A program made the translations under genes and the position numbers. From Macrostomum lignano (taxonomy: Eukaryota): 64,000 bases of DNA. Below are positions 7,650 through 59,090 of the stretch, piece after piece; the first letter of the stretch is position 1, and every line of letters starts with the position of its first letter. Where the stretch lies: NCBI GenBank assembly GCA_002269645.1, contig NIVC01002497.1, forward strand, positions 1 to 64,000, read 5' to 3'. Under the pieces are notes generated by a model. It worked only from the letters and a program-made list of their open reading frames with translations. It had not been told where the DNA came from and did no database searches.

Positions 7650-9166
7650 ATGGCCAGCCGCATTCTCAGCTTGTTTAACTGCGCCGGAGACAGCAGCACA
7701 GGAGACGGCAAGCGGCCCCTCCATCGGAAGAAGAAGAAGAAAAGAAGCGACAGAGCCGGAGGTAAAAGACCGGTGGGCAACCCGGACTCGCCGGAAGAGT
7801 CCTACAGATTTGCCGCGGCCGCAGTACCGCAGCTTGGCGACGCAGCGGACGGAGACGGCGGCGACGGCGACGGTCTCGGCTGGCGCACCTTCAACTACCT
7901 GTGCGACAAGGAGCAGAGCAGCGGCGGCTACAGCCTGGCCCAGGTGCACTTCGCCAGCCGCAGGCCGCTGCGGGCCCGTCGTCAGTTCGGCGCCGAGACC
8001 GAATTCTGGTGCTCCTTCGCTGGCAAGCAGCGGCAGCTCGAGGCCCGTCTGGTATGTCTGCGGCCGGACTGCGGACTCCGGAGCGGCCAGCAGCAGCCGA
8101 CCAGGTGTCCGACGTCAGTCATCGCCATCTCCCGATCGGGCGGCACCAAGCCCGCTGCCGCAACCTGGAATCCACGCATGGCCAGCTGCTCCTCCAGCTG
8201 GGCCGCCAGCTGTTCCACGCGCCGCTGCTAGCCAGGCCGCGCGAGGCCACCCGCCTGATGACCGACTGCGCTGCCTTCTGCATCGCCCAGCAGAGGCTGC
8301 TGTTTGCCGTCTCCTCCGACTTTAGCTTGCTGAAGTGCGCGCCGCTCCAGCGTCTGGCCATTGACGGAGCTTCAGCAGCTCGACAGCGGCTGATTTGGCG
8401 CCGCAGCTGGCGGCTGAAATCCCTCCTGCTGGCTGCCGGCTCAGCGGCAGAAACGGCGGCCGACGACGACTTTGACGACTTAAACGACGACGATGAACAA
8501 GACTCAGGAGGTTCCGACGACAACGACGGCGACGGCGACGAAGATGACGACGAAGAGGAAAACGGTGTCGCCGAGGGTCCGGCGGGTTGCCACACGCTGG
8601 CGCACTGGCAGGCCGGCCACAGACTTTTCCTGGCCTCCAGACGCCGCGTCTGGGCGGTGGACGTCTCCGACGCCGGCTTCGATGAGGAGGATGACGATGA
8701 TGATGAGGCGGAGACAGACGATGAGGCCGAGCAGCTGGACGGGACGCGCTGGGTTCCGCAACCGGCAGACGCCCGGTGCGCATTCAGCCTGCCTTCCAAG
8801 CCGGGCTCGAGCTTCCGCCGCGTCACCGACCTGGCCGTCGATCCGCGCGGCCTGCTGTTTGTCTGCGACGCCGGCGCCAACCGGGTGCTCGTCTTCGACG
8901 CCCGCAACGGCAGCCGCCTGGCCGAGCTGGGCGGGCGCGAGTTCCGACCGGACGTGCTGCTGATGAAGCACCTGCTGCCCGAGGAGGGCCCCGGCTCCGC
9001 CTACCGCCGGCCGGGCCGGCTGCGCAAGTCAAGCGGTGTCTGCGCCTATCAGCGCGACGCCGGCTGCGGCAGCCGCGCCTTCCTGCTGCTGGTCACCGGC
9101 GGCTTTGGCTGCGCCGGCCAGACGTTCGACGTGACGGGACTCCGGCCGGGATCGGCACAGTGCTGA
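7650..9166 (+). CDS. Intronless NHL-repeat (beta-propeller) protein with acidic tracts; one frameshift near 8100
   Basis: ATG at 7650 (ORF 7644..8231) joins ORF 7901..9166 near QQQP/DQVSDV. The NHL motif VTDLAVDPRGLLFVCDAGANRVLVFD is present. It also has an N-terminal KKKKKR basic patch and two D/E-rich tracts, with GC-rich codon usage like the other genes. Confidence 0.7.
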
Positions 9167-9319
9167 TCATCCTGATTGCAGTACATTCTGTACTTTTTTA
9201 TTGGTTTCAGCGTCTCAGTACTGTTTTTTGTAACCACATTCAATATGGGATTCATGCTAGCATTGAGGACAAGTTGGTCGCTTCCCAGCCTGACAGCCTC
9301 ATCAATCTGACAGGAACAG

Positions 9320-9690
9320 CTCTGATCTGACAGACACACTCACCAATCTGTCAGACACACTCACCAATCTGTCAGACACACTCACCAATCTGTCAGACAC
9401 CCTCACCAATCTGTCAGACACACTCACCAATCTGTCAGACACACTCACCAATCTGTCAGACACACTCACCAATCTGTCAGACACACTCACCAATCTGTCA
9501 GACACACTCACCAATCTGTCAGACACCCTCACCAATCTGTCAGACACCCTCACCAATCTGTCAGACACCCTCACCAATCTGTCAGACACACTCACCAATC
9601 TGTCAGACACCCTCACCAATCTGTCAGACACCCTCACCAATCTGTCAGACACACTCACCAATCTGTCAGACATGCTCACCAATCTGTCAT
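9320..9690. repeat. Minisatellite, 21-nt unit TCTGTCAGACACACTCACCAA
   Basis: About 17 tandem copies. Confidence 0.95.
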
Positions 9691-10544
9691 ATATCATGAG
9701 TTTCCTTATATCTTATACGAGTACCTGAATTGGAAAACTTTCTTTAAAGTGCACGATGTCCTAGGAAACTAAGTTTTTATAGAAAGAACATTCCATACTC
9801 ACCGGATAAGTATACGCTCGTAAGTACTAAAGAGAATCATCCAAGTTCAATTCTTTTATTAAATGTCTTACAACATTATTTAGCTTGAAAGCATCTTCAA
9901 TTCCCCCTAATACTTCTCTCTACTAATACTATATGAATTGTGTCGGCCGTTGCGCGCCGCATATCAATGCTAAGCCAAGGAGCCAAGGAAACTTTTTATT
10001 TGTTTCCAAAAGTGTCTGCGCTCAGTGCAGCTGGCTCACTTGCAGCCCTGGAGCTGGCGCCAGTCTGTGCACACGGCACCCCAGAGCCAGCTAGCCGTCC
10101 GACAGACGATCCGGGGAGATTGTTAAAATCGATCTCAGCGCGGGTAGAAGAGCTTCTTGTTCTCGAAATATAGAAATGGAATTAGCAAAAAGAATTGGCT
10201 ATTGCTGCTTTGGCTTCTAGGAGCAGAAGAAAATTCTCTATTAATCTTAACACACCTTGGCGCAGTGTGCGTACTGGGGGAGAGCCACAGTCACCTCGGT
10301 CGAGTGCTTGGGGAAAAAATAGACTGAGATTTATAAGACTTACAATTGGCGCTGCTGATATTTAGCTGCTTGAGGTAAAAGTCTGGCGTTATTAATCATT
10401 CATTCTTCCGAATCGAAAGCTGTGACATTGCTGAAACTGAATTCTGCTTTTCACAGATTCGAAGAAAAATAAAGGAAGGACCACATGCGGTCTGCGAAGC
10501 CTCTCTATCCGGCCATCGGGTCTTTTGAAACTTCACAATAGCAA

Positions 10545-10905: not shown

Positions 10906-12013
10906 TCATCCGACCCGCAGCCATGAGCTGGATTCTTCACATCCGGCCCTTGAGGTAAAAACCGTTAATTTGTTTAAATTCGCAGTGGCAGCAAAGTTCG
11001 GCGGAGAGAGGCCTGGGGAAGGGGGGGGGCTATCGATCTCTGCTAGCGAACGAGCAACACTGGTCGCCGCCGCTTGCGTCAGAGCCCTGCATTTTTGCAC
11101 TTTGCCGCGGCTCCCCCACCCCCCCCCCCAGGCCCCAGCCAATACGGATCAATAAGCCGCCGCAGTGATACCCTCCGGGGCTTCAAAAAATTAACTTGAA
11201 ACGGGAAGAAGGGAATAAAAAGCTGCTGGGTATGGTCGGGCACTTGGCTACGCGCCTCATCATGGCTCGAATTTCAATTAACACCGAGAAGGAGAGAGAA
11301 GAGAGCAAGGAGAGCCCCATACAGTCCTAGTCCGAGCTGATGAGCTAGAAGAGGACAGATGAGGATGGCCGGAGGCTGTGACTGGAGATGATGCGATTCC
11401 CATCCCCTCCCCATCCGCATGGGACAGGCAGGGGGGGGCAGCCAAGAAGGGGGGCGACGGTCTGCTGCTTCTGCCGGCGACAACTGGCGGCCGCTTGTCA
11501 ACTCCAACTCGGCTGTCCCGTCCGCGATCCCCGATCCCAAGCAGCGGCAGCACCGCCTGACCCGAAACACATGCCTGTCCCCCACTTCGTCTGCCTTCGG
11601 GCGTTGAAAGTCGCTTTGTCGGACGGTGCACATGCTGGGCCACCCCAGTTCCGGGATCGGGAGGCGGGGAAGAGCGGGAAGAAGGCGAATGAAAACGAAT
11701 GAATTTATTTGCGGCGCAATCAGAGCCATGTGGAGCGGGGCCGGGTCGACGCGATGAAAGAGGCTGGGGACTATTGATGAAAGAAGAGGGAAGTCGCCGT
11801 TATAACAGATAGAGGCCCGGTCGGGGCCGAAATGAATGATTCCACACGCTTCGGTCGGTGGCCGCAGCTGCTGGAAGGTGGGACAGCGACGAAGCCTCTG
11901 CCTGCCGTCTAGTAGCGATGGAATTCCTGTCCCATGTCAACCGCTAATGCCCTGCCAGTTGGGAATGCATAGAGAGCACTTGCAGCACCTGACTGGGTGC
12001 GCTGAATTTATAA

Positions 12014-12458
<445 letters not shown>

Positions 12459-13355: not shown

Positions 13356-13865
13356 GAAGATCAAACTAAGGTGTCCAAATTAGGAATCATACATGATCTA
13401 AAAGGAATCCGAAACGACTCAAAAGTCGATGATTGGTCATTTGTCATGGCTTTAAAAAGCTCATATTACGTCTTTAAAAAATTCAATTTAGTTGGGTGAA
13501 ACTTTTTTAATATAAAATTAAAAGTTTAAAAGTGAATAAAAAACATACATCGTTGATAATTGCCATGTACTGGGTAATATTTATTAAGTACTTAGTCTCG
13601 GTCGTACAGCAGCACCAATAGTTTGTTATAAGCATCATAAATATAAACATTGATATAAAATTCAAAACACAGGAAGCATCGATGGAAATATGGAAGTTCA
13701 AACCGAAGGAAGCACCAGTTTATCTCACATTATGCTCATAATTCGCTATCAACCTACTTTTTGCTTCAGTAGTAAGCAGTATAAGTAAGCTTTAATTTCT
13801 AAGTAGATGACGAGGCAATCATATCAGCATAGTTACTCGGGCTGTTTACCCACCCGAAAAAGCCC

Positions 13866-14744
13866 CTAAGCCGCTCCGGAGCAGATGACCTGATAGATGA
13901 GGCCGAACTCGCGCTCCTGCACAGCTGCCCGGCACTGGGCCACCACCTGAGCCCGGTAGCGGCCGGTGCGCAGCGCGGCGCCCTGCTGAATCACCAGGCC
14001 CACCTGTTTGAGCGCGCCAACCAGGGAGGCGTGCGCGTCGGCTCTGGCGCGGTGCGAGGCCACCAGGCCGCGGTTGACGCGCAGCAGGTCGGCGTAAGCC
14101 TGCCGCGTGTTGGCCATGTCGCCCAGCAGTCGGGAGTCCTCGGCCCGCACCGCCAAGCTGCGCACCAGGCCGGAGCTGTCCGCCTGATCGGCCGCCAAGC
14201 GCGCCTGTCCAGCCTCGAGCTGTCGGACGCGGCTGGCCAGGCCGTCCAGCTGCTCGGACAGGCCGGGGAAGCTGGCCTCGCTGGCCAGATCGTCCAGACC
14301 GAGGAAATCCGCCAACGATGCGACAACTTCGGCGGCCAATTCGAGCGAGTCAACGCCGACTGTGGCCATCGGCTCGGCGGCGGGTGAGCGAGTTTCGATG
14401 CTCAGCAGGCGGCCAGTGCGGACGCAGCGGAAGCGGAACGAGCCGCTCTCGGCCGCCGCGGTGGCCTTCGACGGCAGCAGGAAGCTGTTGTTGATCCACA
14501 TGGCCAGCCGCTGAGGCCGCTCGGCCAGGCGGAACCGGACCCAGCCGGCCGGGGCTTCGGCCGCACTCGCCGCCTCATCCGCGGTGCCCAGCCAGGCGAA
14601 TGTGGCGAAGCGGGGCAGCAGGCGGGAGGCCTCGAATACGTGGAACTGAGCCACGCTGCCGCGCTGTCCGACCAGGCATTTCAGGTGCAAATCCACCGCT
14701 GCGTTGCGGCTGGGCCGGATAACCAGGGCGAGCTGGCTGCTCAC
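13866..14744 (-). CDS. BBS2: BBS2 exon 4 (terminal)
   Basis: Acceptor CCGGCAG, reads VSSQLALVIRP...ICSGAA, stop TAG. Confidence 0.95.
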   Translation of the reverse strand: MSSQLALVIRPSRNAAVDLHLKCLVGQRGSVAQFHVFEASRLLPRFATFAWLGTADEAASAAEAPAGWVRFRLAERPQRLAMWINNSFLLPSKATAAAESGSFRFRCVRTGRLLSIETRSPAAEPMATVGVDSLELAAEVVASLADFLGLDDLASEASFPGLSEQLDGLASRVRQLEAGQARLAADQADSSGLVRSLAVRAEDSRLLGDMANTRQAYADLLRVNRGLVASHRARADAHASLVGALKQVGLVIQQGAALRTGRYRAQVVAQCRAAVQEREFGLIYQVICSGAA

Positions 14745-17700
14745 CTGCCGGTTTTAGGGGGCAAGCTGGATTAGACCGCACACAATATGCCTCATCCTCC
14801 TCACCTCGGATCTCCCTCACCCCGGATGTCCATCACCCCGGATGTCCCTCAACCCGGATCTCCATCACCCCGGATGTCCATCACCCCGGATGTCCCTCAA
14901 CCCGGATCTCCATCACCCCGGATCTCTACCACCCCGGATCTCCATCACCCCGGATTTGCTTCACCCGGATGTCCATCACCCCGGATCTCCATCACCCCGG
15001 ATTTCCTTCACCTCGGATGTCCATCACCCCGGATGCCCCTCACCCCGGATTTCCTTCACCCCGGATGTCCCTCACCCCGGATCTCCCTCACCCCGGATCT
15101 GCTTCATCCCAAGACAGCCGCTCAAACGCCTACCTGATTGGCGGGCGGGTGCGCCACAAGCGATTCGCCTTCTTCGAAGAGGCCCTCAGCAAAGACGGCC
15201 AGCGCCCTGACCACGGTTTCGTTGGAAGTCGAAACGCTCAGCACCACTGCGTCGGCTTCAACGCTGAGGCTGCTGCTGAGCTGCGTATTGGCTGGTATCA
15301 CCGACGCTTCGGCACCAGCTGTTCCCATGGCAACGCGCAGAGTGCCTTCGAAGTTGACACCCGAGCCAATCCTACGCATGCCGTCGCCGCCATCGCTGCC
15401 GTCGCCGCCTGCCCCTCCCCGCTTCTTCTGATCAGCGTAGTTGCGCAGCTCCAGGCCCAGGCTCTGCTTGTACTGCATCAGCGAGCGCATCGAGCCCGGC
15501 GCGTCTTCCCCCAGGGTGGCGCGAAGCAGCGACGCGGCCAGGTGCTGCGGCACCGCGTCGAATGCCCGCAAGTCGCCCTCAACGCCGACAATAGTGAGGA
15601 GAGGCGGTCGGCCGTCGCCGCGAAGATCGGCCACGGCCAATCCGGCCACGGGACTCGGACCCTGGTCCTGCGGTTCACAGAGGGCGTTTCCATTTTTCTA
15701 GGATAGCTAGTTATTCTATTCTATTACCTTGCTTACTTCGATCACGGAAGTTCATGCATAGACACAACCGGAAGTGCATGCATAGATACAAGCGGAAGTG
15801 CATGCATAGACACAACTGGAAGTGCATGAATAGACACAACCGGAAGTGCATGCATAGACACAACTGGAAGTGCATGCATAGACACAACTGGAAGTGCATG
15901 CATAGACACAACCGGAAGTGCATGCATAGACACAACCGGAAGTGCATGCATAGACACAACTGGAAGTGCATGCATAGACACAGCCGGAAGTGCATGCATA
16001 GACACAACTGGAAGTGCATGCATAGACACAACTGGAAGTGCATGCATAGACACAACTGGAAGTGCATGCATAGACACAACCGGAAGTGCATACATAGACA
16101 CAACCGGAAGTGCATGCATAGACACAACTGGAAGTGCATGCATAGACACAACTGGAAGTGCATGCATAGACACAACTGGAAGTGCATGCATAGACACAAC
16201 TGGAAGTGCATGCATAGACACAACTGGAAGTGCATGCATAGACACAACTGGAAGTGCATGCATAGACACTACCGGAAGTGCATGCATAGACACAACTGGA
16301 AGTGCATGCATAGACACAACCGGAAGTGCATGCATAGACACAACCGGAAGTGCATGCATAGACACAGCCGGAAGTGCATGCATAGACACAGCCGGAAGTG
16401 CATGCATAGACACAACCGGAAGCGTTTGCGGCAGCAAAACCGGAAATGAAAATGCCCAACGCTCACCCTGAACACAACTTCGCCAGTGGCCACCCGGCGG
16501 GCGTCGACTTTGCCGCCGCTCCAGCCCACCAGCAGTTCAACCTGGCCGTCGCTGTCCAAATCGAAGGCGGCCAACGCCACTGGCCGGTGTTTGGACTTGA
16601 TCCGCCACAGCCGCTTGGAGCGCTCGTACACCCCAACGGTGCCGTTGGCCAGGGCGTAGGCGAACCTGGGCGAGTCGGGCAGCGCCAGCAGAGCCACAGG
16701 CGAGTCGGTCTCAGTGAATTCGCGCGCGATCGCGTCGTCGCGAAACAGACGAAGCTCGAAATCTTCGCTGCCAACTAGCAGTAGTTCGCCGGCCTCGTCG
16801 CCGAGGAATTTTCCAGCAGTCATGGAGGTGACGCGGTCGCCAGTGACGCTCCAGTAGGCCTCGGCACCGCTGGAATCGAAGCCAAGCAGGGTGCAGTTGC
16901 CACCGGCGATGGCCACTCGGCGAGTTTTTCCCTGCTTCTGCTGCTGCTGTCTGCCGGGCTCGCCACCGCCGCTGCCGTCTCCCGATTGGCTGACGACTAC
17001 GGCGAAAGCGCCGTCAGGCACGGGACGGTTGAACAGGTCCGCATTCCTGTTGAACAGGAGAGGGGGGCAGTCAAGACAGTCAGCAAATACAGGTGAGACA
17101 GTCGGCAAATACAGGTGAGACAGTCGGCAAATACAGGTGAGACAGTCAGCAAATACAGGTGAGACAGTCAGCAAATACAGGTGAGACAGTCAGCAAATAC
17201 AGGTGAGACAGTCGGCAAATACAGGTGAGACAGTCAGCAAATACAGGTGAGACAGTCAGCAAATACAGGTGAGACAGTCAGCAAATACAGGTGAGACAGT
17301 CGGCAAATGCAGGTGAGACAGTCAGCAGATACAGGTGAGACAGTCAGCAAATACAGGTGAGACAGTCGGCAAATACAGTCAAGACAGTCGGCAAATACAG
17401 GTGAGACAGTCGGCAAATACAGGTGAGACAGTCAGCAAATTCAGGTTAGACAGTCGGCAAATACAGGTGAGACAGTCAGCAAATTCAGGTGAGACAGTCG
17501 GCAAATACAGGTGAGACAGTCAGCAAATACAGGTGAGACAGTCAGCAAATACAGGTGAGACAGTCAGCAGATACAGGTGAGACAGTCAGCAAATACAGGT
17601 GAGACAGTCAGCAAATACAGGTGAGACAGTCGGCAAATACAGGTGAGACAGTCAGCAAATACAGGTGAGACAGTCGGCAAATACAGTCAAGACAGTCGGC

Positions 17701-18411
17701 AAATACAGTCAAGACAGTCGGCAAATACAGTCAAGACAGTCGGCAAATACAGTTAAGACAGTCGGCAAATACAGTCAAGACAGTCAGCAAATACAGGTGA
17801 GACAGTCAGCAAATACAGGTGAGACAGTCAGCAAATACAGGTGAGACAGTCAGCAAATACAGGTGAGACAGTCAGCAAATACAGGTGAGACAGTCAGCAA
17901 ATACAGGTGAGACAGTCAGCAAATACAGGTGAGACGGTCAGCAGATACAGTCAAGACAGTAAAAAAGTACAAGTTTTTTTAATTTGAAAAAACTGCGAGC
18001 TAAAAACGATATTTTTACAGTGAACCAAACAGGTTTCAACGCTAACTTTATACTTAGAAGAGAAGAGTAATCAAGTTCTTTTTCCCAGCTTACTCACCTG
18101 TGCACGTCGTACACCAGCATGTCAGTTGCCGTGCCAATCACTAGAGCGTCACGTGACGCCGAATCGAGCAGCCGGCCGGCGCACATCGATAGCACCGGCT
18201 GCTCCATATTCAAAATCTGCACCGGCAGGCCGGTGTCTGTTTCCATGGCAACTGGGCCAGACTGCTGCTGCCCGGGACTGAGCAGCATCAGCTTGCCGGA
18301 GTTGGCGGCGCACACGAGAGTGTCGGAGCGGCCATCGAATCGGCCGACAGCCACCAGGCCGGGCAGCACTGGCTGGGGCAGGCGGCCCTGATAGGCTGGA
18401 ACCAGAGCCAT
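13866..18411 (-). CDS. BBS2: Bardet-Biedl syndrome 2 protein (BBSome subunit), 4 exons, 768 aa
   Basis: complement(join 18411-18098, 17046-16467, 15667-15134, 14744-13866) is 2307 nt, open, all GT-AG. It matches BBS2 motifs GGNCTLLGFD, WSVTGDRV, LLVGSEDFELRLF, YALANGTVGVY, WRIKSK, GWSGGKVDAR, VIPANTQL, VFAEGLF, VDLHLK and QFHVFE. Confidence 0.97.
14790..15110. repeat. 16-nt minisatellite (CATCACCCCGGATCTC) filling BBS2 intron 3
   Basis: About 20 variable copies between the splice sites. Confidence 0.92.
15134..15667 (-). CDS. BBS2: BBS2 exon 3
   Basis: Acceptor AACCGCAG, reads DQGPSPVAGLAVADLRGDG...HPPANQ, donor GTAGGC. Confidence 0.93.
15321..15334. promoter_or_regulatory. RFX X-box GTTCCCATGGCAAC inside BBS2 exon 3
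   Basis: Exact match to GTTNCCATGGNAAC, encoding VAMGT in a non-conserved insertion. Function is inferred. Confidence 0.6.
15748..16425. repeat. 24-nt minisatellite (GGAAGTGCATGCATAGACACAACT) filling BBS2 intron 2
   Basis: About 28 copies. Confidence 0.97.
16467..17046 (-). CDS. BBS2: BBS2 exon 2
   Basis: Acceptor TTCAACAG, reads NADLFNRPVPDG...EVVFR, donor GTGAGC. Confidence 0.95.
17068..17960. repeat. 22-nt minisatellite (ACAGGTGAGACAGTCAGCAAAT) filling BBS2 intron 1
   Basis: About 40 copies, ending about 20 nt from the 3' splice site. Confidence 0.97.
18098..18411 (-). CDS. BBS2: BBS2 exon 1
   Basis: ATG at 18411, donor AG|GTGAGT, phase 2. Confidence 0.93.
18239..18252. promoter_or_regulatory. 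RFX X-box GTTTCCATGGCAAC inside BBS2 exon 1
   Basis: Exact match to GTTNCCATGGNAAC, about 160 nt downstream of the ATG, encoding VAMET. BBS genes are established RFX targets. Confidence 0.65.
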
Positions 18412-19959
18412 GCTGCTGCTGCTGCTGCTAGCTCGGCCAATAGAGCATGCAAGTCATTTAGATGAAATGGAAGAGCATCTATTTTATTAGTATTAATATT
18501 ATTATTAGTTGTGTTGTTATTTTTGTTGCTAAAAAAATCAAAGCAACCTTCTTTTTACTTTAATAGAAAGTCAGTTAATAATTTAACACTGATTTAATGG
18601 CTTAAACTTTTAGATATAACTTTGCCAAATAAAAAATCTACATTTGCTTCTAGTTAAATAAACTATACCAAGAAAATGTTCCTTATGATAGAATAAATTC
18701 CTAGACATGCATTCCATAGATAGTACTAAACTTCTTGTAAAATTGTTAGAATTGTTTTTCCTTATTGGACTTTACTCGAAAGAAACAGTTAAATAAAATA
18801 AACGAATTTTATAGTTAATCAAATACAAATACAATATTGCTGCATTTAGGGTCATTTTAGCCTTTTTCATATACATGGTTACTAAATCACTGAGGGTGTT
18901 GTATGCATGATTTTATTGAATTAATTAGTGCTTCTAGACTTTCAAAAACAATGTCTTGCATAGGTTGGTCTATACCAGCATAATTAAATGATGAATCAAT
19001 ATAACTTTTTGTGATTCAGGCATTAATTTAATTAGATATAATGAAAATTTACCAAAAAATGAGAAATTTACAAACTCATCTGCCCTAAAAATACATTGCT
19101 TTTATCAAGTATTAGTTGTAATGTTGCAGCAAGCAGCAACAAAAGAAAATTTAATTTTATTTAATTTATTCTTATTTAATTTCTTATTTAATTTCTAATG
19201 GTTTCGAACATTTCTGGTTATTAAATAGCTGCTGGTTATACTAATTTGTGTTGGTTTTAGCAACATCGTTAACTTAAATAAATAAATAATTGGTATATAA
19301 AATAATAAACTAAAAAACCAGAAATAGAATTAATCTGTGAAAAACTGCTGCCATTCAAGGAGGCTGAAAGGGAATAATTTTTACGGAAAAGGAAATACAG
19401 CAATTGCGGTGAAGTATAGGGATGTTGTATGTTGGTAACCATGCAGATAAAACTTTAATTGTTGTTTTAGCGAAATTTACCAATGCAATCTAATGTTAGA
19501 CTATTTTGAGAACTTAAGACTCTTTAAAGTGTTCAACACGATAATTTAAAAAACAATTTTGACCAGTTGCCAGGTTTCCAAGTTAGCAAGTAGCTTCTTT
19601 AAATTATTTTGTCCCGTATCGGCCTATAAAAATGAACTGAATTTTTTCATTTGAATTTCAATACGACGCTGTTTAAATTTCAAGTATTTAAACAAAATCT
19701 AGAGCGTCCTTTTATTTACGGATAATTCATATCGCTAGTAATTCTCTTAACTTTTAGAAATTTTAGTAGCATATTAAACAAGGAAAGTCGATAACCACAT
19801 GAGTAGTAAATATATCTGTGCTGATTTACAGACTGTACATGTATTTGCATGGTTACTGGATGGATGGATTAATCAACGCGCGCTATTACGCGTATATGTA
19901 CATGTTAGAAGATAAACTTACTTATATATGTAGTCACAATACAGACTGTGAGAAGGGGT

Positions 19960-21029: not shown

Positions 21030-21334
21030 GCGGCCTGCTGCATTCTTTAAGATGACTATTACGCTGCGCCGCACACCGCGTGCAGCTGCTGAGGAGAATG
21101 CAGCTCGGCATTCGCACATTAAAAAGGCTGTCAAAAGCTTTCTCTCCAGACATGAGCCCCATCGAGCATGTCTGGGAGTTTGTAAAGCGAAGAGCTCAGC
21201 AGGATACCCCGCAGAATGCCGAACAGTTGCGACAGGCGGTTGCGCATCGCTGGCAGCAGCTGCCCCAAGAGTTCATCAACCGGCTGGTGATCAGCAGGAG
21301 GCCACGACAAATGAACTTTGGCATGCTTGCGTAG
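21030..21334 (+). mobile_element. Tc1/mariner transposase remnant (DDE C-terminal part)
   Basis: IL*DDYYAAPHTA (cf. QDNAPxHTA) is followed, after a frame change, by SPDMSPIEHVWEFVKRR...LRQAVAHRWQQLPQEFINRLV, the Tc1 SPDLNPIE block. No TIRs resolved. Confidence 0.85.

Positions 21335-28514: not shown

Positions 28515-41603
<13,089 letters not shown>

Positions 41604-44172: not shown

Positions 44173-59090
<14,918 letters not shown>

What the first reader, a model, noticed from the sequence alone, without database searches (positions are those of the whole stretch)
15321..18252. Two perfect RFX X-boxes embedded in BBS2 coding exons (protein-coding regulatory sites)
Seen: GTTTCCATGGCAAC (18239-18252, exon 1) and GTTCCCATGGCAAC (15321-15334, exon 3) both match GTTNCCATGGNAAC exactly. 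Both are read in the same register (VAMET, VAMGT), and both lie in segments that do not resemble my recollection of vertebrate BBS2. I saw no X-box in the AT-rich DNA upstream of the ATG. Established: BBS genes are RFX targets through this motif. A 12-fixed-base motif is expected about 1e-4 times in 2.3 kb of random sequence, so two is unlikely by chance. Inference: this lineage places ciliary-gene RFX control inside the CDS, so flexible linkers have been shaped by a DNA motif.
Basis: partly seen in the sequence, partly recalled or inferred. Interest (0 to 1): 0.75.

Follow-up and report, generated by a model that had tools for sequence, protein, structure and literature searches.

The report
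RFX X-boxes inside flatworm BBS2 exons
A cilia gene (BBS2) of the flatworm Macrostomum lignano carries two top-quality binding motifs for the cilia master regulator RFX inside its protein-coding exons, and its ancient sister gene carries a third at a different exonic spot, so these look like real regulatory sites written into codons, although no binding has been shown.

Summary
GTTTCCATGGCAAC (18239-18252) and GTTCCCATGGCAAC (15321-15334) are the only X-box matches in the 64 kb window. They lie in exons 1 and 3 of a minus-strand, four-exon BBS2 gene of Macrostomum lignano and read V-A-M-E-T and V-A-M-G-T.

Evidence that they are not chance:
- Codon-order shuffles give one strict motif in 2 of 20,000 trials and never two.
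- With the protein held fixed, both motifs survive synonymous permutation in only 11 of 20,000 trials.
- On a matrix of 30 validated C. elegans X-boxes they score 22.7 and 20.3 bits. The validated maximum is 21.8, and the next best site in the window scores 12.6.
- A second BBS2 paralogue (about 50% identical) has one exonic X-box, GTCTCCATGGCAAC, at a non-homologous position. It is identical to the validated C. elegans bbs-5 X-box.
- No comparable site occurs upstream or in introns.
- None of 118 other animals' BBS2 proteins carries a peptide that could encode the strict motif.

Most likely these are RFX sites kept by selection inside coding sequence. RFX binding, any effect on expression and a lineage-wide rule are all untested. 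Conservation in congeners and enrichment in other ciliary genes could not be checked here. I class this as a new variant of known kinds (X-box; exonic enhancer).

The parts
18239..18252 (.). X-box A1. Plus strand GTTTCCATGGCAAC; gene strand GTTGCCATGGAAAC, coding V-A-M-E-T (residues 54-58). In exon 1, nt 160-173 of the CDS.
   Evidence: Scores 22.7 bits on the matrix of 30 validated C. elegans X-boxes, higher than all 30. Present in all four gene copies.
15321..15334 (.). X-box A2. Plus strand GTTCCCATGGCAAC; gene strand GTTGCCATGGGAAC, coding V-A-M-G-T (residues 410-414). In exon 3, CDS nt 1228-1241, about 3.08 kb downstream of the ATG in genomic DNA.
   Evidence: Scores 20.3 bits, better than 26 of 30 validated X-boxes. 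Lies in the lineage-specific insertion of the linker between the coiled coil and the GAE domain.
18098..18411 (-). BBS2-A exon 1 (ATG at 18411-18409).
   Evidence: Splice donor CAG|GTGAGT. The annotated transcript 5' ends of the copies lie 21-33 nt upstream of the ATG.
16467..17046 (-). BBS2-A exon 2.
15134..15667 (-). BBS2-A exon 3.
13866..14744 (-). BBS2-A exon 4, ending with the stop codon.
   Evidence: The full CDS is 2,307 nt, 768 aa, GC 67%, GC3 80%. Pfam finds BBS2_N, BBS2_Mid, BBS2_GAE, BBS2_pf and BBS2_hp. It aligns end to end with bovine BBS2 of the solved BBSome, 6vbu chain 2, E = 1e-149.
18146..18159 (.). Perfect 14-nt palindrome GCGTCACGTGACGC (E-box core GTCACGTGAC) in exon 1, 93 nt 3' of X-box A1 in the CDS. 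Possible companion site; post hoc observation.
   Evidence: It is the only perfect 14-nt palindrome in the CDS. The same 10-nt core occurs in exon 5 of paralogue B. Codon-shuffle probability of the core is about 5e-4 per CDS.

Best explanation
The two 14-mers are genuine high-affinity X-box motifs, the palindromic recognition site of RFX winged-helix transcription factors. They are embedded in coding exons 1 and 3 of Macrostomum lignano BBS2-A and maintained by selection at the DNA level as cis-regulatory sites.

Proposed mechanism (inferred): an RFX dimer binds the double-stranded exon DNA in ciliated cells or their precursors and activates BBS2 transcription. The exon 1 site would act as a promoter-proximal element just downstream of the transcript start. 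The exon 3 site, and the exon 5 site of paralogue B, would act as intragenic exonic enhancers. The same bases also encode V-[A/S]-M-x-T, the mildest of the three possible readings of the motif, and in BBS2-A they sit in structurally tolerant segments.

Shown here: motif presence, motif quality, non-randomness, dependence on codon choice, recurrence in the paralogue, and absence of a comparable site upstream or in introns.

Inferred: RFX binding, activation, and that M. lignano RFX has the canonical specificity.
For: 1. Only two matches in 64 kb, none in 100 shuffles.
2. Codon-order shuffles of the CDS give one strict motif in 2 of 20,000 trials and two in none.
3. With the protein sequence fixed, permuting synonymous codons keeps both motifs in 11 of 20,000 trials. 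The motif needs GTT (20% of Val codons) and GGA (12% of Gly codons) in a gene with 80% GC3.
4. On a matrix of 30 experimentally validated C. elegans X-boxes (Table 1 of PMC3245922), A1 scores 22.7 bits and A2 20.3. The validated median is 18.4 and the maximum 21.8. The next best site in the window scores 12.6.
5. Independent replicate: the ancient paralogue BBS2-B (48-52% aa identity) has exactly one such site in each of its three copies. It is exonic, in the same codon register (V-S-M-A-T) and at a non-homologous position. Chance is 13 of 20,000 by codon shuffle and 2 of 100 for the whole 25.6 kb locus.
6. That site, GTCTCCATGGCAAC, is identical to the validated C. elegans bbs-5 X-box. Its reverse complement is the core of the oligonucleotide labelled MAP1A in the EMSA methods of an RFX1 study, where it is listed among the probes and cold competitors.
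7. The B site replaces an Arg conserved in 11 of 12 aligned BBS2 proteins.
8. None of 118 other animals' BBS2 proteins contains a peptide that could encode the strict motif in any frame. Oyster, coral and abalone BBS2 loci (103 kb) have no site above 14.5 bits.
9. BBS genes are established RFX targets in nematodes.
Against: - No binding, chromatin or expression data exist for these sites.
- The four A copies are 99-100% identical in exons, with 14 substitutions and none expected in 28 nt. No congener sequence was found. Cross-species nucleotide conservation is therefore untested.
- The A and B sites are not at homologous positions, so there is no deep conservation, only recurrence.
- The exon 3 (+3.1 kb) and B exon 5 (+3.7 kb) positions lie outside the window where validated human X-boxes occur (-2300 to +1400; PMC5838959) and far from the -60 to -767 range of validated nematode sites.
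- A positive control failed. No clear promoter X-box was found at BBS2 in three other animals, so 'BBS2 always carries an X-box' is not a safe premise.
- M. lignano RFX was not examined.
Confidence: 0.6

Rival explanations
1. Neutral coincidence. The motifs arose by chance in GC-rich coding sequence and have no function.
For: The finding was selected post hoc from a large scan. The sites are not at homologous positions in the two paralogues. No conservation data exist. Three other animals' BBS2 loci show no obvious X-box at all.
Against: Chance is about 1e-4 per CDS for one strict site and unobserved for two. With roughly 70,000 gene models in this genome (PMC5730564), fewer than 1e-3 genes with two sites would be expected genome-wide. 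That is my arithmetic, not a scan. The gene that has them belongs to a classic RFX target class. The paralogue, which was not part of the ascertainment, replicates at about 6.5e-4. Non-preferred codons are required.
Confidence: 0.08
2. The sequence is under selection for something other than RFX. One option is an internal in-frame AUG in a strong initiation context (GCCAUGG) that yields N-terminally truncated BBS2 isoforms. Other options are an RNA-level palindrome or a different DNA-binding factor.
For: All three sites place ATG in frame. They are the only CCATGG in either CDS and the only Met codons with that context. Met412 of A lies just before the GAE domain, a plausible domain boundary.
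Against: An initiation context explains only about 7 of the 12 fixed bases. The flanking GTT...AAC arms, which make the sites score at the top of the validated X-box range, are unexplained. The B site has a weaker -3 base (T) and falls inside the platform domain. Met56 of A would truncate the first propeller blade. The shared register is also explained by amino-acid tolerance: the other two frames force x-[CFSY]-H-G-N or [FL]-P-W-x, some with stops.
Confidence: 0.1
3. RFX does bind, but the sites are not the main activators of BBS2. They could repress, as at human MAP1A exon 1, modulate elongation or splicing, drive an internal or antisense promoter, or serve a neighbouring gene.
For: Per the introduction and discussion of PMC3245922, human RFX1 and RFX3 repress MAP1A through two X-boxes in its first exon. 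In an RFX1 study, the oligonucleotide labelled MAP1A carries a 14-mer identical to the B site. Two of the three sites lie more than 3 kb from the gene start. Extra weak X-boxes fine-tune rather than drive expression in C. elegans (PMC3245922).
Against: No comparable X-box exists anywhere else in or around either paralogue to act as the main site. No clear gene lies in the 9 kb upstream of BBS2-A, only repeats and a mariner remnant. The neighbour of BBS2-B is GLE1, which is not a ciliary gene.
Confidence: 0.15

Closest known systems
DAF-19/RFX X-boxes of C. elegans bbs and IFT genes (validated set, Table 1 of PMC3245922)
   Same: The motif is the same. B's site is identical to the bbs-5 X-box. 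A2 differs by 1 nt from those of bbs-1 and bbs-8, and A1 by 1 nt from those of bbs-2, xbx-1 and xbx-6. The target class is the same (BBSome subunit genes). The architecture is the same: one strong half-site (GGCAAC) plus a weaker half with an AT spacer.
   Different: All 31 validated nematode sites lie 60-767 bp upstream of the ATG in non-coding DNA. Here all three sites are inside coding exons, two of them more than 3 kb into the gene, and no upstream site is found. Function is unproven here.
Human MAP1A first-exon X-boxes bound by RFX1/RFX3 (as cited in PMC3245922; oligonucleotide sequence in PMC2859551)
   Same: Two X-boxes sit inside an exon of the regulated gene. The 14-mer core of the MAP1A oligonucleotide, GTTGCCATGGAGAC, is identical to the BBS2-B site on its other strand.
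   Different: MAP1A is not a ciliary gene, and its sites mediate repression in non-neuronal cells. I did not check whether that exon segment is translated.
Exonic enhancers (eExons) and dual-use codons ('duons') (PMC4745165, PMC3342275, bioRxiv 10.1101/2021.09.06.459186)
   Same: Transcription-factor recognition sequence overlaps codons. Codon choice is constrained by the DNA motif.
   Different: Those were defined by chromatin or reporter assays, mostly in vertebrates and plants. Here the case rests on sequence statistics alone. It concerns a single well-defined motif of a coherent regulon that was gained independently in two paralogues.
EF-C/RFX1 site of the hepatitis B virus enhancer I (my own knowledge, not checked here)
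   Same: An RFX site lying within protein-coding sequence.
   Different: That is a compact viral genome in which all regulatory DNA overlaps ORFs, not a cellular gene with abundant non-coding DNA available.

Membership tests
RFX X-box cis-element | Imperfect palindrome fitting GTNRCC-N(0-3)-RGYAAC, or the nematode consensus GTHNYYATRRNAAC | tested here: met
   All three sites (A1, A2, B) fit, and all share the 10-mer GTTGCCATGG.
RFX X-box cis-element | Score within the range of experimentally validated X-boxes | tested here: met
   The sites score 22.7, 20.3 and 21.8 bits. The validated range is 7.2-21.8 with median 18.4. Background maximum is 12.6 in the window and 14.5 in other animals' BBS2 loci.
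RFX X-box cis-element | Promoter-proximal, non-coding position (upstream of the ATG in nematode and fly; -500 to +500 of the TSS in human) | tested here: not met
   All sites are inside coding exons. A1 is about +160 from the ATG, within the human 'robust' window. A2 (+3.1 kb) and B (+3.7 kb) are outside even the permissive window.
RFX X-box cis-element | Association with a ciliary gene | tested here: met
   BBS2 has the full domain architecture and matches BBSome subunit 6vbu_2.
RFX X-box cis-element | Bound by an RFX protein | not testable with these tools
   Indirect only. The 14-mer identical to the B site on its other strand is listed under the label MAP1A among the EMSA probes and competitors of an RFX1 study. 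That paper's binding result for this oligonucleotide was not read, and M. lignano RFX was not examined. An rfx3-like gene is reported in a tapeworm.
RFX X-box cis-element | Target expression depends on the motif or on RFX | not testable with these tools
   No expression data. Transgenesis exists for this species (PMC5730564).
RFX X-box cis-element | Motif conserved in related species | tested here: inconclusive
   The four A copies and three B copies all keep their sites, but the A copies are 99-100% identical overall. Divergence among the B copies was not measured. No congener was found in the protein or metagenome collections. The paralogues carry sites at different positions.
Exonic enhancer / dual-use codons | TF motif overlapping codons, with codon choice biased towards the motif | tested here: met
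   Synonymous permutation keeps both A motifs in 11 of 20,000 trials and the B motif in 378 of 20,000.
Exonic enhancer / dual-use codons | Enhancer activity or TF footprint on the exon | not testable with these tools
   No chromatin or reporter data available here.
BBS2 protein family | N-terminal beta-propeller, middle region, GAE, platform and hairpin domains | tested here: met
   Pfam BBS2_N, BBS2_Mid, BBS2_GAE, BBS2_pf and BBS2_hp are all above the gathering score. Full-length alignment to bovine BBS2. Substitutions among the copies are mostly at third codon positions (11 of 14), consistent with purifying selection.

The most novel reading that the evidence does not exclude
In Macrostomum lignano, non-coding DNA is saturated with fast-turning-over minisatellites and transposons. 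The most novel reading is that cis-regulatory sites of the ciliary regulon are systematically sheltered inside coding exons. These would include RFX X-boxes and perhaps companion sites such as the GTCACGTGAC E-box seen in exons of both BBS2 paralogues. Under this reading the protein sequences of variable loops and linkers, and even a conserved Arg, have been rewritten to carry them.
Probability: 0.17. Interest if true: 0.8.

Novelty: new variant of a known kind. Interest (0 to 1): 0.58.

Why it matters
Classical X-box screens looked upstream of the gene start. The fly screen, for one, kept only matches upstream of the ATG (PMC2375033, PMC5838959). A ciliary gene whose only X-boxes are in coding exons would therefore be invisible to them.

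If these sites work, they are a clean natural example of a defined transcription-factor code overriding codon usage, and at one site a conserved residue. It would have been gained independently in two paralogues. The species has working transgenesis, so the idea can be tested directly by synonymous recoding.

It would also caution that synonymous sites in ciliary genes are not necessarily neutral.

Tried and rejected
1. Nucleotide conservation among gene copies. L001, L003 and L004 keep both sites, but their exons are 99-100% identical, and the window is the same locus as L004, so the test has no power.
2. Congeners. No other Macrostomum BBS2 is among the 120 best protein hits. A metagenome scan found nothing.
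3. Positive control. I expected a promoter X-box at BBS2 in oyster, coral and abalone. None was found by consensus, mismatch scan or matrix, only isolated half-sites. This may be because 5' UTR exons are not annotated. The result is inconclusive.
4. Enrichment in other M. lignano ciliary genes. I found no way to retrieve such genes with the tools available, because locus look-ups accept only proteins encoded in the window or returned by the homology search.
5. Neighbouring gene as the true target. The 9 kb upstream of BBS2-A holds no clear gene, only a mariner remnant. ORFs elsewhere in the window gave only an NHL-repeat hit. The extra part of the fused UniRef model P0123 looks non-genuine.
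6. Shared flanks or a mobile-element origin. The three sites share nothing beyond the motif. The 156-bp foldback in B intron 4 has no other copy in the DNA held.
7. Weak upstream X-boxes. Only a GTTGCT-N11-AGCAAC half-site pair at 18525-18547, with non-canonical spacing and a best 14-mer score of 10.3 bits.
8. Literature. No paper on RFX or X-boxes in Macrostomum was found.
Full report
**Observation.** The pattern GTTNCCATGGNAAC occurs exactly twice in the 64 kb window, at 15321-15334 (GTTCCCATGGCAAC) and 18239-18252 (GTTTCCATGGCAAC). It occurs in none of 100 dinucleotide-preserving shuffles. The same two positions are the only matches to the looser nematode consensus GTHNYYATRRNAAC.

**Gene model.** Reading the minus strand gives a four-exon gene: 18411-18098, 17046-16467, 15667-15134 and 13866-14744. 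All junctions are GT-AG. The CDS is 2,307 nt and encodes 768 aa, with 67% GC and 80% GC3. Pfam finds the complete BBS2 architecture, and the protein aligns end to end with bovine BBS2 of the solved BBSome (6vbu chain 2, E = 1e-149). It is 100% identical to a Macrostomum lignano protein.

**Context.** All three introns are filled with minisatellites and the intergenic DNA is AT-rich. The published Mlig_3_7 assembly holds three copies of this gene, L001, L003 and L004. The window is the same locus as L004, with identical exons and intron lengths. All copies keep both sites. Their exons are 99-100% identical, with 14 substitutions, 11 of them at third codon positions. This shows purifying selection on the protein but gives no power to test conservation of a 14-mer.

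**Chance and codon tests.**
- Shuffling the order of the gene's own codons yields one strict motif in 2 of 20,000 trials and never two.
- Holding the protein fixed and permuting synonymous codons keeps both motifs in only 11 of 20,000 trials. The motif needs GTT (20% of Val codons) and GGA (12% of Gly codons) in a strongly GC3-biased gene.
- The motif is therefore not a by-product of the amino-acid sequence.
- A strict X-box can be read in three frames. This frame gives V-[ASPT]-M-[AEGV]-T. The others force x-[CFSY]-H-G-N or [FL]-P-W-x, some with stops. The shared register is what one expects if a DNA motif had to be fitted into a protein at least cost.
- In a 12-species alignment both A sites lie in segments that do not align. 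One is a hypervariable propeller loop. The other is a lineage-specific insertion in the linker before the GAE domain.

**Motif quality.** I built a log-odds matrix from the 30 fourteen-base sites among the 31 X-boxes listed as validated in C. elegans (PMC3245922, Table 1). Site A1 scores 22.7 bits, above all 30. Site A2 scores 20.3 bits, above 26 of 30. The next best position in the whole window scores 12.6, below the tenth percentile of validated sites at 15.9. No site above 15.9 bits exists elsewhere in any M. lignano DNA fetched. That DNA includes the upstream flank of the A copies (10 kb in L001 and L004, 5.9 kb in L003) and all introns.

**Independent replicate.** M. lignano has a second, ancient BBS2 paralogue (P0002, 48-52% identical, seven exons) present in three copies, L002, L005 and L006.
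- Each copy has exactly one X-box, GTCTCCATGGCAAC, scoring 21.8 bits. It lies in exon 5, about 3.7 kb from the ATG, and reads V-S-M-A-T in the same register.
- It is not homologous in position to either A site. It lies in the platform domain, where F-V-S-M-A-T-G replaces the usual F-x-S-L-R-G, including an Arg conserved in 11 of 12 sequences.
- The probability of such a site is 13 of 20,000 by codon shuffle and 2 of 100 for the whole 25.6 kb locus.
- The 14-mer is identical to the validated X-box of C. elegans bbs-5.
- Its reverse complement is the core of the oligonucleotide labelled MAP1A among the EMSA probes and competitors of an RFX1 study (PMC2859551).
- All three sites share the 10-mer GTTGCCATGG, that is, one perfect half-site plus a weaker one.

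**Negative controls.**
- None of 118 BBS2 proteins from other animals contains a peptide that could encode the strict motif in any frame.
- The BBS2 loci of an oyster, a coral and an abalone (103 kb) have no site above 14.5 bits.
- That last result cuts both ways. It shows the motif is not an inevitable feature of BBS2 sequence. It also means I could not demonstrate the expected promoter X-box in other animals, perhaps because their 5' exons are not annotated.

**Interpretation.** The simplest reading is that these are RFX sites kept by selection within coding DNA.
- The exon 1 site is about 190 bp from the annotated transcript 5' end, inside the -500 to +500 window where validated human X-boxes concentrate (PMC5838959). 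Mechanistically it is a promoter-proximal site that happens to overlap codons.
- The exon 3 site and the B exon 5 site lie outside even the permissive window and would have to act as intragenic enhancers.
- Precedents exist. The introduction and discussion of PMC3245922 state that human RFX1 and RFX3 repress MAP1A through two X-boxes in its first exon. RFX1-3 ChIP peaks include an exon class (PMC7498320). Exonic enhancers and dual-use codons are established.
[quoted passage not shown] The fly screen kept only matches upstream of the ATG (PMC2375033). Such screens would miss sites like these.

**What is not shown.** There is no evidence here for RFX binding, any effect on expression, conservation in other Macrostomum species, or a general rule for the lineage. 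I could not retrieve other M. lignano ciliary genes or congeners with the tools available.

**Rival explanations.**
- Pure chance is very unlikely given the numbers above.
- A different selected function, such as an in-frame AUG in a GCCAUGG context, explains only the centre of the motif and not the arms that give the high X-box score.
- RFX may bind with a role other than activating BBS2. This remains open.

**Side observation.** Each paralogue's CDS contains exactly one perfect 14-nt palindrome, and both are built on the same core, GTCACGTGAC. In A it is in exon 1, 93 nt from X-box A1. In B it is in exon 5, 326 nt from the B X-box. The two positions are again non-homologous. The core has a codon-shuffle probability of about 5e-4 per CDS. 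In the M. lignano DNA held, it occurs elsewhere only at the centre of a foldback element in one copy of B intron 4. This was seen post hoc. It fits the idea that these exons carry a small regulatory module.

**Verdict.** The finding is real and statistically robust. It is best described as a new variant of known kinds (X-box; exonic enhancer).

Noticed in passing
window 18146-18159; L002:13354-13367 (also L005 core at 13601, L006 core at 13473): Each BBS2 paralogue's CDS has exactly one perfect 14-nt palindrome, and both are built on the E-box core GTCACGTGAC: GCGTCACGTGACGC in A exon 1 and GAGTCACGTGACTC in B exon 5. The positions are non-homologous, and each lies in the same exon as an X-box. 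Codon-shuffle probability is about 5e-4 per CDS. This could be a second exonic factor site of bHLH-ZIP type.
   Followed up: partly
L002:12904-13059 (intron 4 of BBS2-B): A 156-bp foldback element with 63-nt arms that are 97% complementary interrupts a 16-nt minisatellite. Its centre is GTCACGTGAC. Each arm carries two CCAAT boxes and an X-box-like GTTTCTATTGGCAAC with a 3-nt spacer. Blast found no copy of it in L005 or L006, so it is probably mobile. No other copy exists in the DNA held.
   Followed up: partly
window 18525-18547: GTTGCT-N11-AGCAAC: two RFX-like half-sites in inverted orientation with a non-canonical 11-nt spacer, 114-136 nt upstream of the BBS2-A ATG in AT-rich DNA. It scores only 10.3 bits as a 14-mer. 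A similar GTTACC-N11-AGTAAC lies in a transposon-like element upstream of BBS2-B (L002, about 8797).
   Followed up: no
window 18435-18443: A CCAAT box (CTATTGGCC on the gene strand) lies 24-32 nt upstream of the ATG, at the annotated transcript 5' end. It resembles CTATTGGCTGAG in the foldback element of B intron 4.
   Followed up: no
window 15745-16422 (intron 2), 17074-17950 (intron 1), 14797-15110 (intron 3): All three BBS2-A introns are almost entirely minisatellites, with 24-, 22- and 16-nt units, and their lengths differ between gene copies. Nine units of the intron 2 array contain the 10-mer ACCGGAAGTG, which I recall (not checked here) as the canonical ETS consensus. The intron 1 unit contains CAGGTG.
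   Followed up: no
L002/L005/L006 versus window/L001/L003/L004: M. lignano carries two ancient BBS2 paralogues, about 50% identical, with 6 versus 3 introns. The first intron sits at different positions in the two paralogues; the others were not compared. Each paralogue is present in 3-4 near-identical copies. Paralogue A is the more divergent: it has extra Gly/Gln-rich insertions and no BBS2_CtH Pfam hit.
   Followed up: partly
L002: about 8747-9849: A 1.1-kb element with terminal inverted repeats (CAGTGTTGGGCA...) and many GTAAC/GTTAC repeats sits 140 bp upstream of the BBS2-B ATG. It looks like a non-autonomous DNA transposon.
   Followed up: no
window 21080-21334 (+): An ORF fragment resembling the C-terminus of a Tc1/mariner transposase (…IEHVWEFVKRR…), identified from memory and not searched. 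It lies in the otherwise gene-poor 9 kb upstream of BBS2-A.
   Followed up: no
window 46804-52274, 29861-32481, 44956-45986, 12010-12458: Very large tandem arrays: a 20-mer x 274 copies (5.5 kb), a 31-mer x 86 copies, (TATC)n of about 1 kb and (ATAG)n of 450 bp. Tandem repeats make up a large part of the window.
   Followed up: no
L009: about 31575-34115 (abalone BBS2 locus): About 40 tandem copies of a 69-bp unit each translate to residues 557-575 of abalone BBS2. This is an exon-derived satellite inside the gene.
   Followed up: no
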